A DNA stretch of 64,000 bases, taken from assembly GCF_963506605.1 (NCBI RefSeq), contig NC_083281.1:37572001-37636000 (forward strand). The letters are read 5' to 3'. Origin of the DNA: Zootoca vivipara. Its lineage: Eukaryota. Shown one piece after another: positions 54,248 to 64,000 of the stretch. Position 1 is the stretch's first letter. The number at the start of each line of letters is the position of its first letter. The translations under genes were made by a program, and so were the position numbers. The notes under the pieces are model-generated. The model did no database searches and was not told the origin of the DNA. It was given only the letters and a program-made list of their open reading frames with translations.

Positions 54248-61291
<7,044 letters not shown>

Positions 61292-61418: not shown

Positions 61419-63253
61419 CTGGAGGGTGGAACGGCACGCGATCCCCATCAAGGGATAACGACGCTGTGTTAATCTGCCGCTAGACTAGGGCGGTCGCTTA
61501 CAGATCGCCCCCCCCCCCAAATGACACGGATTTGCATGAAAATTGTATCTGCTGTTTTATATGTGCAGATGCAAACCTATTTGAATAAGATTTGCTTTCA
61601 GTACTTTATATGTGCAGGTGGAAATTTAGACATCATTACTATACTTTCAATAGAAATGTGATACATCTCACTGCAGAAGAGAAGACTGTCATAGAATCAT
61701 AGAATTGTAGAGTTGGAAGGAACCCCAAGGGTCATCTAGTCCAACCCCCTGCCATGCAGGAATCTCAACAACCAGGCAACCATTGTATCTGCTCAGTATG
61801 CTGTCGAGGTGCTGCTACGGTAGCTGTGGATGGGCAACTTCCAGGCCCCTCCAGCTCTCCCTTGTTAGGGTTATTTATTGTTAAACTGAACAATTTAATT
61901 ATCCTTAGGACTGAACAGCCTTTCAACCTGAGAAGTCCTTTAAACAGAAGACTGTCCTCTGTAAAGTCCAACATGTGACTACCCTACACAAAACTGTGGT
62001 TTTTGGCTGTAATAGAGTAAGGATTGTTTTCAACAAAAGCCACATTCACTCCATACATTAAAAGCAGTATCATACCACTTTAAACAAACATGGATTCCCG
62101 CAAAGAATTCTGGGAGCTGTAGGTTGTTACTAATGCTGAGAGTTGTTGGGAGACCTCTAGTCCCCTCCTAGAGCTACAATTTTCATAGTGATTTAAAAAC
62201 GCTGTTTCACAGGAAACTCTGAGAAGCCAATTAAGAGGATGCAGTATTGGAGTACTAAGCAGGTGTCTTGTCAGCAGTCTAGCTGCAGTATCCTCTGATT
62301 TAATAGACATTCTCCCCCTCTCGAGGAATTTTAGCTGTGCAATGAGGGAATAGACTAAGACCAAAGAGACTTGGGTTCAAATCTCCACTCCACTGTGAAG
62401 CTTCCTGGATGTGCTTGTGCCACATAAAAAGGTAATAAATAAGACAAACACATAAATAAACTTTAGGAAATCTATTTATTATATTTTTCTCTGGTTTTTA
62501 AATAAACAAAGTCCATCCACCAGAACACCAACACAGCTCACCAATAAACAAAACAATGAGGGAAATGAAACACAAACTATTTTCATCCCAGACCAAACTA
62601 GGCAATCCATTTCTAGCTGAAGTAATACCCAGGCAAGCAAAAGGTGGGGATACTGTGCCAGCCTTCCTTCCCCAACCTGATGCCCTCTAGATGTTTTAGA
62701 CTATAACTCCCATCAGCCCTGGCAAGCATGATCCTGAGGCTGATGCAAACATGCCTGTGTTGCCTGGGACTAATGGGATTGTGTTGCCGTCCAAACATCT
62801 GGAGGGCACCAGATTGGGAAAGGCTGAATGCCAAAGCAGTACATTATCAAATCCTGTATATTGTGACTGAGAAGACCAAGCAACTTGGAGCCACAGATGT
62901 AGCTTTAACTAGGTGTTATGGGCATAAATACACAGGGAAATTAATTTTCAGGACAGAGCACCAACCCACAAATCAACATTTTTGGAGAAGCAATTTCCCA
63001 ATTAAACAGAATACAAAAGGGGTAATGCTCAAAAGGGGTAATGGAATTGGCCTGTTTTATATTAGGAATAAGGCCATCTATCTACATTCCTCTGGTATAT
63101 TATTTCACCATATACTCACATATTTTGTCTTCCTCATATGGTCAAATCATCAAGGGATAAATGTGTAACAGGAATATTGAGGATCATTGCATGTGCTACC
63201 ACTGTTACCATATAATCTATATCTCTGATGAAAGTCAGGAGTGCTTGAGATGC

Positions 63254-63281
63254 TAATAATAATAATAATAATAATAATAAT
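63254..63281. repeat. (AAT)n microsatellite
   Basis: About 9 units, direct reading. Confidence 0.9.
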
Positions 63282-63610
63282 CCTTCCATGGGAAAAATGT
63301 GCAAGAGAAAGATCCCCACAGATTTTGCAAGAAGTACCAAGAGGAGGAGCTGACAATCATCTGCTATCCTGCTCACAGATCTCTTGTCTTACCTAAACTC
63401 CATGTGGATTTTCCAGCCCAGTGACACATCTTCCCACACAAATTCCATCCTGTAAAACACTGCCTCTAAAGCACTGCTGTGGATTACATCAAAATGTTGC
63501 TAGGTAGGTCAGGATGAGATGGCTATGATTGGCCATTAACAAAGATATTCTAAAACACATTTTCTCTCAGTTCAGAAAACCAAACAGTGGAAGCTGATAA
63601 CCCTACATTT

Positions 63611-64000
63611 TTAAGTTGCAGTTTGTGGGAGAACAACTGACACTAAAACTATCAGGCCAAAGGTAATCATGAGAGGCCAAGTCATATCAGGATTTACAAT
63701 CTGGGCAGAACAGCGTCTCTTGCGGGACACAGTGAACGACTTCATCGTTCCTTCCTTCTCCTTCAGCTGCACCCATAAGAATTTCAGCTTTGTGGGTGGG
63801 AAGAACTTTGCCCCAAACAGGTTGCATTTGGGTAGGAAGAAGTGGGTCAGGTGAGCAGTGGCCACCTTGTGGATGAAATTGGCCAAGACCCTCTCGAAAC
63901 ACTGAGGAACTTCAGAAGGCTTCCAGTCTTTATTGGCCTTCCACTCCCACAGGGTGTGCAGGAAGGACGTCCGACTGTGGTAGGAACTCAGATGAGCCAA
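63611..64000 (-). CDS. cGAS/Mab-21-family nucleotidyltransferase-like protein, C-terminal part (5' truncated by window), with hydrophobic C-terminal tail
   Basis: Frame open from the window edge: LSSYHSRTSFLH...W...CF...F...T..L..FFLP..NLF...FL..Q has the same spacing as human cGAS SSYHVKTAFFH...W...CF...F...T..L..YFIP..NLF...FL..Q; TAA at 63613-63611. Confidence 0.8.
   Translation of the reverse strand: MAHLSSYHSRTSFLHTLWEWKANKDWKPSEVPQCFERVLANFIHKVATAHLTHFFLPKCNLFGAKFFPPTKLKFLWVQLKEKEGTMKSFTVSRKRRCSAQIVNPDMTWPLMITFGLIVLVSVVLPQTAT

What the first reader, a model, noticed from the sequence alone, without database searches (positions are those of the whole stretch)
63611..63730. The cGAS-like protein ends in a tail-anchor-like membrane segment instead of the normal cGAS terminus
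Seen: past the point where human cGAS ends, the frame continues ~35 residues. It has a basic cluster RKRR (63724-63713), then a 17-residue uncharged hydrophobic run WPLMITFGLIVLVSVVL (63679-63629), then only PQTAT-stop. The positions matching the human NN motif (N513/N514, the SPSB3 degron) are G-T. Known: a single C-terminal TM helix with basic residues before it and a very short tail is the tail-anchored topology with a cytosolic catalytic domain; canonical cGAS is soluble and STING is an ER membrane protein. Inference: a membrane-tethered cGAS-like enzyme that could signal locally at the ER or another organelle, or act as a decoy. The lack of basic residues after the helix favours ER/secretory over mitochondrial targeting.
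Basis: partly seen in the sequence, partly recalled or inferred. Interest (0 to 1): 0.8.

Follow-up and report, generated by a model that had tools for sequence, protein, structure and literature searches.

The report
Tail-anchored cGAS paralogue of a lizard
The lizard's second cGAS-type gene really ends in a membrane anchor, and that anchor marks an old copy of the DNA sensor cGAS found from sharks to platypus; in lizards and snakes this copy has lost a key catalytic residue, so it is more likely a membrane-bound regulator than an enzyme.

Summary
Window 63611-64000 (minus strand) is the end of a Mab-21/cGAS-fold gene. Its protein runs about 36 residues past the canonical cGAS terminus: RKRR, a 17-20-residue uncharged hydrophobic run, then PQTAT and a stop.

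The tail is not a lizard oddity. On a tree of 183 proteins, each cut before its tail, one clade of 93 (support 96) holds 75 of the 76 hydrophobic tails. That clade spans sharks, sturgeons, teleosts (the fish cGASb/cGASL type), coelacanth, platypus, crocodile, turtles and squamates. Canonical cGAS has no such tail.

Between lizards and turtles the tail is the best conserved segment of the protein: 74% identity, against 64-70% for the catalytic core.

The "enzyme" reading is weak for this species. All squamate copies have N or S where human cGAS has D319, the third metal-binding acid. The lizard's zinc thumb has also lost its His and first Cys pair. A tethered regulator or decoy is more likely.

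No open-access paper mentions the anchor; the subscription fish papers could not be read.

The parts
63611..64000 (-). Last 129 codons plus stop of the cGAS-like gene. The exon runs off the window end. It equals residues 390-518 of the database gene model P0063.
   Evidence: ORF list. tblastn of P0063 gives 100% identity over 64000-63614.
63764..64000 (-). C-terminal part of the Mab-21_C (HhH/H2TH-like) domain of the cGAS fold.
   Evidence: Pfam PF20266, E 3.3e-14, residues 1-79 of the piece. cGAS chains are the best PDB matches. AlphaFold2 core pLDDT is about 90, and Foldseek puts cGAS on top with TM-score 0.83-0.85.
63746..63751 (-).
   Evidence: MAFFT alignment A2, printed.
63686..63745 (-). 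Linker MKSFTVSRKRRCSAQIVNPD containing the basic cluster RKRR (63724-63713). The motif TVSRK[RK] is shared with turtles.
   Evidence: The AlphaFold2 model places residues 485-498 at pLDDT below 50.
63626..63685 (-). Predicted membrane helix MTWPLMITFGLIVLVSVVLP.
   Evidence: Kyte-Doolittle 19-residue maximum 2.24, against 1.04 for the best segment elsewhere in the protein. Modelled as a helix at residues 499-512. 74% identity across squamates and turtles.
63611..63625 (-). Four residues after the helix (QTAT, net charge 0) and the TAA stop (63613-63611).
57600..59006 (-). Context only: two RPL11 coding exons (59006-58809 and 57740-57600) on the same strand, about 4.6 kb downstream of the stop.
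   Evidence: tblastn with the RPL11 part of the fused Crotalus horridus gene model P0002.

Best explanation
The stretch encodes the C-terminus of a tail-anchored paralogue of cGAS. This is the vertebrate 'cGAS-like' lineage, which includes fish cGASb/cGASL, and not the canonical DNA sensor.

Shown:
- The protein (518 aa in the database model) has a disordered basic N-terminus, a cGAS-fold core, a short flexible linker with a basic cluster, one hydrophobic helix and four further residues.
- This hydrophobic tail is found throughout the paralogue clade, from sharks to platypus, and canonical cGAS lacks it.
- In squamates the third metal-binding acid of the active site is Asn or Ser. In this lizard the zinc thumb has also lost its His and first Cys pair.

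Inferred:
- The helix is inserted into a membrane after translation, leaving the cGAS-fold domain in the cytosol. The most likely membrane is the ER, because the helix is fairly hydrophobic and nothing charged follows it.
- Being catalytically crippled, the lizard protein acts as a membrane-tethered regulator, scaffold or decoy of the STING pathway rather than as a cGAMP synthase. This would be in line with reports that fish cGASb binds STING and dampens interferon induction.

My odds: a real membrane anchor 0.8; not a working synthase in this species 0.7; ER as the target membrane 0.5; STING-pathway regulator 0.4.
For: - The sequence and coordinates are confirmed.
- Fold: Mab-21_C domain with cGAS as nearest solved kin; the AlphaFold2 core matches cGAS structures at TM-score 0.83-0.85.
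- There is one hydrophobic segment, at the extreme C-terminus, and no other above Kyte-Doolittle 1.04. It is modelled as a helix after a low-confidence linker.
- The tail motif DM[ST]WPLMIT.GL..LVS..L is shared by lacertids, Anolis, Sceloporus, Phrynosoma, Rhineura, a python and four turtles.
- The tail is the best conserved segment: 74% identity, against 64-70% for the core, 47% for the linker and 32% for the N-terminus.
- All 22 tails examined have a 15-30-residue stretch free of D/E/K/R/Q/N/H, at most 6 residues after it, and a net charge of 0 to +1 there.
- Trees: a 100* split between the paralogue clade and canonical cGAS. On 183 rows cut before the tail, a clade of 93 (support 96) holds 75 of 76 tails.
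- Active site: the triad reads E/E/N in the window protein and N or S at the third site in all eight squamates with a residue there. It reads E/D/D in crocodile, the second turtle paralogue, shark, lungfish, most fish and canonical cGAS. The zinc-thumb region here reads NLN..AY..KCC.
- Fish literature: killifish cGASb made no measurable cGAMP in HEK293T cells (PMC13694710). Grass carp cGASb/cGASL binds STING and lowers the interferon response, as cited in PMC11264591, PMC7582293 and PMC9945316.
Against: - There is no transcript evidence. Three RNA-seq runs of the source species, with about 6% of each read, gave zero reads on 63349-64000.
- No dedicated TM predictor was available, and there is no localisation data for any member.
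- The hydrophobic core is short (17-20 residues) and holds Pro, Thr, Gly and Ser. The AlphaFold2 confidence for the helix is only 50-57.
- Loss of activity is inferred from residue identity alone. An Asn at a metal site sometimes retains partial function.
- Colubroid snakes, lungfish and one turtle paralogue lack the tail in their gene models, so it is dispensable in some lineages.
- The link to STING rests on fish over-expression studies that I could read only second-hand.
Confidence: 0.7

Rival explanations
1. It is an active membrane-tethered synthase. The anchored protein would sense a ligand at a membrane and make cGAMP or another cyclic dinucleotide next to STING.
For: The GS motif and the first two acidic residues (E-F-E) are kept, and the fold is intact with high model confidence. 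Other members of the clade (crocodile, shark, sturgeon, teleosts) keep the full E/D/D triad and the zinc thumb together with the anchor, so this reading may well be right for them.
Against: In this lizard and in all squamates sampled, the third metal-binding acid is N or S. The lizard's zinc thumb lacks its His and first Cys pair, and snakes also have S213 changed to D. Even fish cGASb, with an intact triad, gave no measurable 2'3'-cGAMP in cells (PMC13694710).
Confidence: 0.12
2. The anchor is real, but it targets the mitochondrial outer membrane, peroxisomes or another organelle rather than the ER.
For: The helix is short, of only moderate hydrophobicity (GRAVY about 2.0) and contains Pro, Gly, Thr and Ser. 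Such features occur in mitochondrial tail anchors (general knowledge). Grass carp cGASL was reported to act on MAVS, a mitochondrial tail-anchored protein (title cited in PMC9945316).
Against: There is no positive charge after the helix in the lizard, and at most +1 in any of the 22 tails. Mitochondrial and peroxisomal anchors usually carry basic residues there (general knowledge, not tested here).
Confidence: 0.2
3. The tail is not part of a functioning product in this species. Either the gene is silent or decaying, or the mature mRNA ends or splices before the tail, for example at the ATT|GTAAAT site near 63697.
For: No RNA reads fell on the exon in three runs. The catalytic site and zinc thumb are degenerate. 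Colubroid snakes have lost the tail.
Against: The database model for this genome has an intact 518-codon frame. The residues across the putative donor (QIVNP here, LIVNP in Podarcis and Rhineura) and the whole tail are conserved as protein in lizards and turtles, more strongly than the core. Gene models of at least ten species read through. Zero reads in a 6% sample of unstimulated tissue is weak evidence.
Confidence: 0.08
4. The hydrophobic tail is not a membrane span. It would instead be a soluble hydrophobic element, such as a C-terminal degron or a helix that folds back on the domain to inhibit it.
For: AlphaFold2 confidence for the helix is low (50-57), and no membrane data exist.
Against: The model does not pack the helix against the core. 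Across the clade the sequence of the tail changes completely between fish, shark, platypus and reptiles, while its length, hydrophobicity, position at the very end and lack of charge are kept. That is the pattern of a membrane span rather than a specific protein-binding motif.
Confidence: 0.05

Closest known systems
Fish cGASb / cGASL (zebrafish, grass carp, killifish)
   Same: It belongs to the same paralogue clade as teleost proteins of the cGASb size and type. These also end in a hydrophobic tail. They are reported to have little or no cGAMP synthase activity and to bind STING as negative regulators (PMC13694710, PMC11264591, PMC7582293).
   Different: Fish proteins keep the full catalytic triad and zinc thumb; the lizard protein does not. 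The tail sequences are unrelated apart from their hydrophobicity. I did not confirm that the named zebrafish, grass carp or killifish proteins themselves are among my hits. No paper I could read mentions the anchor.
Canonical cGAS (human, mouse, turtle, Xenopus, fish cGASa)
   Same: Same Mab-21 nucleotidyltransferase fold (Foldseek E 1e-26, TM-score 0.83-0.85, 26-30% identity). It also has a disordered basic N-terminus.
   Different: It sits in a separate clade with 100* support. Canonical cGAS ends in ..NNxFPxF with no hydrophobic tail: 0 real cases among 90. Here NN is GT, the third catalytic Asp is Asn and the zinc thumb is eroded.
Tail-anchored innate-immunity proteins MAVS and TREX1
   Same: A cytosolic functional domain held on an organelle membrane by a single C-terminal helix. 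TREX1 and MAVS are described as tail-anchored in PMC11904002 and PMC11348129.
   Different: The folds and functions are unrelated. This is an architectural analogy only.
Prenylated OAS1 p46 isoform
   Same: From my own knowledge, not checked here: a nucleotidyltransferase of the same OAS/cGAS superfamily that is placed on endomembranes by a C-terminal lipid anchor. It shows that membrane placement can define what such a sensor sees.
   Different: It uses a CaaX lipid anchor, not a transmembrane helix. It is an active dsRNA sensor and belongs to a different family branch.

Membership tests
cGAS / cGLR (Mab-21 nucleotidyltransferases) | Mab-21 NTase core plus the Mab-21_C domain, i.e. the cGAS fold | tested here: met
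   Pfam PF20266 on the window piece. PF03281 and PF20266 are precomputed for the full model P0063. Foldseek puts cGAS structures on top, with TM-score 0.83-0.85.
cGAS / cGLR (Mab-21 nucleotidyltransferases) | Active-site motif h[QT]GS ... [DE]h[DE]h ... h[DE]h, as used to define cGLRs in bioRxiv 10.1101/2023.02.22.529553 | tested here: not met
   GS and E-F-E are present, but the third acid is Asn (SLNLV). All eight squamates with a residue there have N or S.
cGAS / cGLR (Mab-21 nucleotidyltransferases) | Zinc thumb H..CC..C of DNA-sensing cGAS | tested here: not met
   The window protein reads NLNSRSQAYRQHHKTKCCRKDC where canonical cGAS has NHG..KTCCE....KCCRK.C.
Canonical cGAS orthologue group | Groups with cGAS of other vertebrates on a tree, and ends in ..NNxFPxF | tested here: not met
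   It falls in the other clade, with a 100* split and clade support 96. The terminus differs.
Vertebrate cGAS-like paralogue clade (includes fish cGASb/cGASL-type proteins) | Groups with these proteins on a tree built without the tail | tested here: met
   The window protein lies inside the clade of 93 rows. Its nearest rows are Rhineura, Phrynosoma and Sceloporus, and the turtles form the sister group to the squamates.
Vertebrate cGAS-like paralogue clade (includes fish cGASb/cGASL-type proteins) | Conserved gene neighbourhood | tested here: inconclusive
   RPL11 lies downstream in the window. A rattlesnake gene model fuses the two genes (P0002).
Tail-anchored membrane proteins | A single hydrophobic span within about 30 residues of the C-terminus | tested here: met
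   A 20-residue stretch free of D/E/K/R/Q/N/H, followed by 4 residues. Kyte-Doolittle 19-residue maximum is 2.24, above the classical 1.6 threshold.
Tail-anchored membrane proteins | No N-terminal signal peptide and no other membrane span | tested here: met
   The N-terminus MPVRNGEKMEKRSQSKKRGR.. is highly charged. The best non-tail 19-residue window scores only 1.04. This rests on hydropathy alone; no SignalP or DeepTMHMM was available.
Tail-anchored membrane proteins | Post-translational insertion, with the N-terminal domain in the cytosol | not testable with these tools
   This needs localisation, carbonate extraction and protease protection experiments.

The most novel reading that the evidence does not exclude
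Jawed vertebrates ancestrally carried two cGAS genes: the soluble DNA sensor, and a second one anchored by its tail in the ER membrane beside STING. Therian mammals lost the second gene. Its transmembrane helix is more conserved than its catalytic core between lizards and turtles, with fixed Thr, Gly and Ser positions. That helix may make a specific contact inside the membrane, for example with the STING transmembrane domain. In squamates the protein would then have become a catalytically dead, membrane-resident brake or scaffold of STING signalling.
Probability: 0.3. Interest if true: 0.8.

Novelty: new variant of a known kind. Interest (0 to 1): 0.62.

Why it matters
cGAS is treated as a soluble cytosolic and nuclear sensor, and work on vertebrate cGLRs has focused on mammals, which lack this gene. 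A second cGAS lineage that has kept a membrane anchor in sharks, ray-finned fish, coelacanth, platypus, crocodile, turtles and lizards would have three consequences:
- Where the protein sits would become part of how this branch works.
- It would offer a simple explanation for why fish cGASb behaves as a STING-binding regulator.
- It would provide natural comparisons: anchored and catalytically intact (crocodile, shark, fish), anchored and catalytically dead (lizards), and both lost (colubroid snakes).

The gene itself is already in the databases as 'cGAS-like'. The new content is the clade-wide anchor and the dead active site in squamates. Fish papers I could not read may already have noted a TM segment in passing.

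Tried and rejected
- **RNA evidence.** I laid three raw-read RNA runs of the source species and one contig run on 61501-64000. The exon got zero RNA reads; only two repeats (61669-61836 and 62677-62844) were covered. The contig run X6 covers coding and non-coding parts alike at depth 2-3, so it is probably DNA. Expression, the 3' end and the suspected donor near 63697 all stay untested.
- **Genomic DNA of relatives.** That ruled out exon structures, dN/dS, synteny outside squamates, a check of whether the second turtle paralogue has a missed TM exon, and a check of the presumed frameshift in colubroid snakes.
- **Literature.** No open paper mentions a membrane anchor on cGASb, cGASL or any vertebrate cGLR. 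Liu et al. 2020 (FASEB J) is not held.
- **A chance read-on was rejected.** About 1% of random ORF ends in the window look like this, but 75 of 93 clade members share the feature.
- **A GPI-anchor signal was rejected.** There is no N-terminal signal peptide.
- **The one 'TM' hit inside canonical cGAS was rejected.** P0004, from a gecko, is flagged LOW QUALITY by its source and has a Cys-rich, frameshift-like end.
- **Length limit.** The 129-aa piece could not be used with the search for homologous proteins. I used the whole-library HMMER search first and then the full-length proteins it returned.

Full report
**What is in the window**

On the minus strand an open frame runs from the window edge at 64000 to a TAA at 63613-63611. 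It translates to 129 residues ending ...FTVSRKRRCSAQIVNPDMTWPLMITFGLIVLVSVVLPQTAT.

The first 79 residues match Pfam Mab-21_C (E 3.3e-14). The closest solved proteins are mouse, human and pig cGAS, at about 35% identity (E 1.6e-9).

A database gene model of 518 aa (P0063) matches 64000-63614 at 100% for its residues 390-518. It is listed without a source, which is how the tool marks a protein encoded by the window itself. The rest of the gene lies beyond the window.

Its nearest named relatives are 'cGAS-like' proteins of Podarcis, so the genome is a lacertid lizard.

RPL11 exons lie on the same strand about 4.6 kb downstream.

**Is the tail more than chance?**

About 1% of stop-terminated open stretches in the six frames of the window end in a comparable hydrophobic run (7-11 of 901). 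One instance alone would therefore be weak evidence. Conservation settles the question.

A whole-library HMMER search with the 129-aa piece and three word-indexed searches returned 214 proteins. The motif DM[ST]WPLMIT.GL..LVS..L followed by 4-6 residues is present in:
- lacertids, Anolis, Sceloporus, Phrynosoma, the amphisbaenian Rhineura and a python;
- the turtles Pelodiscus, Mauremys, Trachemys and Caretta.

Across these ten proteins, mean identity to the window protein by segment is:

| Segment (residues) | Identity |
|---|---|
| Tail 494-513 | 74% |
| NTase core | 64% |
| Mab-21_C | 70% |
| Linker | 47% |
| N-terminus | 32% |

Against the four turtles alone, the tail is 71% identical and the core 60-61%. 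The tail is the best conserved part of the protein.

**The tail belongs to a whole clade**

More distant relatives have tails of unrelated sequence but the same design. These are crocodile, platypus, coelacanth, the sharks Mustelus and Heptranchias, sturgeons, and about fifty teleosts of 440-560 aa. In all 22 tails measured, a stretch of 15-30 residues free of D/E/K/R/Q/N/H is followed by at most six residues with a net charge of 0 to +1.

An IQ-TREE of 67 proteins splits them, with 100* support, into canonical cGAS and a second clade that contains the window protein.

A FastTree of 183 proteins, each cut just after the conserved HFF.P..NLF motif so that the tail could not influence the tree, gives a clade of 93 with support 96. 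That clade holds 75 of the 76 hydrophobic tails. The single outside case is a gecko entry flagged LOW QUALITY by its source.

Inside the clade, 18 models lack a tail:
- three colubroid snakes, which end ..TWPHWAALSCSP where python continues ..TWPHMIPLGLLGLLSVVLPNTAV; this is consistent with a shared frameshift, which I could not check;
- nine models of a second turtle paralogue, which stop at ..AFAAHEE exactly where crocodile continues into a linker and a TM tail; this could be a real loss or a missed exon;
- the lungfish;
- five teleost models with odd or truncated ends.

The anchor is therefore the ancestral mark of an old gnathostome paralogue of cGAS. No therian mammal or bird sequence appeared in the clade in my sampling. 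That is an observation from limited searches and does not show that the gene is absent from those groups.

**Architecture**

P0063 has no other hydrophobic segment. The best 19-residue Kyte-Doolittle window outside the tail scores 1.04, against 2.24 in the tail. Its N-terminus is highly charged, so a signal peptide is very unlikely.

AlphaFold2, run with a 60-sequence alignment, gives the following:
- a confident core at residues 130-485, with pLDDT about 90;
- a low-confidence linker at 485-498;
- a free helix at 499-512, with pLDDT 50-57.

The core matches cGAS crystal structures with TM-score 0.83-0.85.

One C-terminal span, basic residues before it, almost nothing after it and no signal peptide: this is the tail-anchored design. 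Zero charge after the helix and GRAVY of about 2.0 fit ER targeting better than mitochondrial or peroxisomal targeting. That rests on general knowledge of tail-anchor sorting and was not tested here.

**Enzyme or not**

The residues aligned to human G212/S213, E225, D227 and D319 are as follows:
- G-S, E, D, D in canonical cGAS, and in crocodile, the second turtle paralogue, shark, lungfish and most fish of the paralogue clade.
- G-S, E, E, N in the window protein.
- N or S at the D319 position in all eight squamates that have a residue there. Snakes also have S213 changed to D.
- Platypus reads A-S, E, S, R.

The zinc thumb (NHG..KTCCE....KCCRK.C) reads NLNSRSQAYRQHHKTKCCRKDC in the lizard, so the His and the first Cys pair are gone.

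The lizard protein therefore fails the active-site motif used to define cGLRs (bioRxiv 10.1101/2023.02.22.529553). It very likely makes no cyclic dinucleotide and probably does not bind DNA the way cGAS does.

This fits the fish literature. Killifish cGASb produced no measurable cGAMP and no immune gene induction in human cells (PMC13694710). Grass carp cGASb/cGASL is reported to bind STING, compete with cGASa and lower interferon induction (cited in PMC11264591, PMC7582293, PMC9945316).

I did not verify that those named fish proteins are among my hits. The link is by clade, size and source naming.

**Most likely mechanism**

The shown and inferred steps are listed under Best explanation. In short, the protein is a cGAS-fold domain held on the cytosolic face of a membrane, most likely the ER. 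There it would act as a non-catalytic regulator, scaffold or decoy close to STING.

Between lizards and turtles the helix is conserved in sequence and not only in hydrophobicity, including Thr502, Gly504 and Ser510. This suggests a specific contact inside the membrane, but that is speculation.

**What remains open**

Expression in this species is unknown. Three RNA-seq runs of the source species, with about 6% of each read, gave no reads on the exon. The residues spanning that site are conserved as protein in Podarcis and Rhineura, and the frame and tail are conserved far beyond, which argues against splicing out.

**Novelty**

The gene is annotated in many genomes as 'cyclic GMP-AMP synthase-like' or, wrongly, as cGAS. 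The fish paralogue has been studied.

In ten full-text searches I found no open paper that mentions a membrane anchor on any vertebrate cGAS paralogue. The large cGLR survey mentions transmembrane domains only for STING.

The three primary fish papers are not held, and they may show a TM box in a domain figure.

I therefore rate this a new variant of a known kind, of moderate to good interest. The anchor across the clade, the catalytically dead squamate branch and the loss in colubroid snakes are testable and, as far as I could see, undescribed.

Noticed in passing
window 57600-59006 (-): RPL11 coding exons (59006-58809 and 57740-57600) lie on the same strand, downstream of the cGAS-like gene. 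A Crotalus horridus gene model (P0002) fuses the two genes, which looks like an annotation artefact and shows the neighbourhood is shared with snakes.
   Followed up: partly
window 61669-61836: A short stretch with very high depth in all RNA runs and in the contig run, with many variant letters and loose ends on both sides. It behaves like a high-copy interspersed repeat (SINE-like) that is transcribed from many loci.
   Followed up: no
window 62706-62808: Reads and one contig join 62808 back to 62706 with 5 extra letters (TCACG or TCATG), in three RNA runs and in X6. Either a tandem or rearranged copy of this roughly 100-base element exists elsewhere, or it is a back-spliced or duplicated form. 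In the RNA run with by far the most reads here (X20) the depth is on one strand only.
   Followed up: no
window 63245-63289: An (ATT)n microsatellite of about 10 units lies in the presumed 3' flank of the gene. The reads tool skipped it as a repeat.
   Followed up: no
proteins P0066, P0070, P0072 (colubroid snakes) versus P0064 (python): Viperid, colubrid and dipsadid models all end ..TWPH/TRPH + 8-9 residues ..SCSP, without the hydrophobic run that python keeps. This suggests one frameshift in the colubroid ancestor, on top of an S213-to-D change in the GS motif that python shares.
   Followed up: partly
proteins P0003, P0075-P0079, P0092, P0113, P0117 (turtles) versus P0074 (crocodile): Turtles carry two paralogues of this clade on different chromosomes. 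One has the lizard-type tail. The other has an intact catalytic triad and zinc thumb, but its models stop at ..AFAAHEE, exactly where the crocodile orthologue continues into a linker and a TM tail. The last exon may have been missed by annotation.
   Followed up: no
protein P0085 (platypus): A monotreme keeps a member of the anchored clade (504 aa) with a hydrophobic tail but a degenerate active site (A-S, E, S, R). It sits on a very long branch. No therian sequence appeared in the clade.
   Followed up: partly
proteins P0067-P0069 (Podarcis isoform X3, 436 aa): These predicted isoforms skip the segment from about DWQMRLEKKK to ..RHNK, which is part of the NTase core and includes the third catalytic position, but they keep the Mab-21_C domain and the tail.
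   Followed up: no
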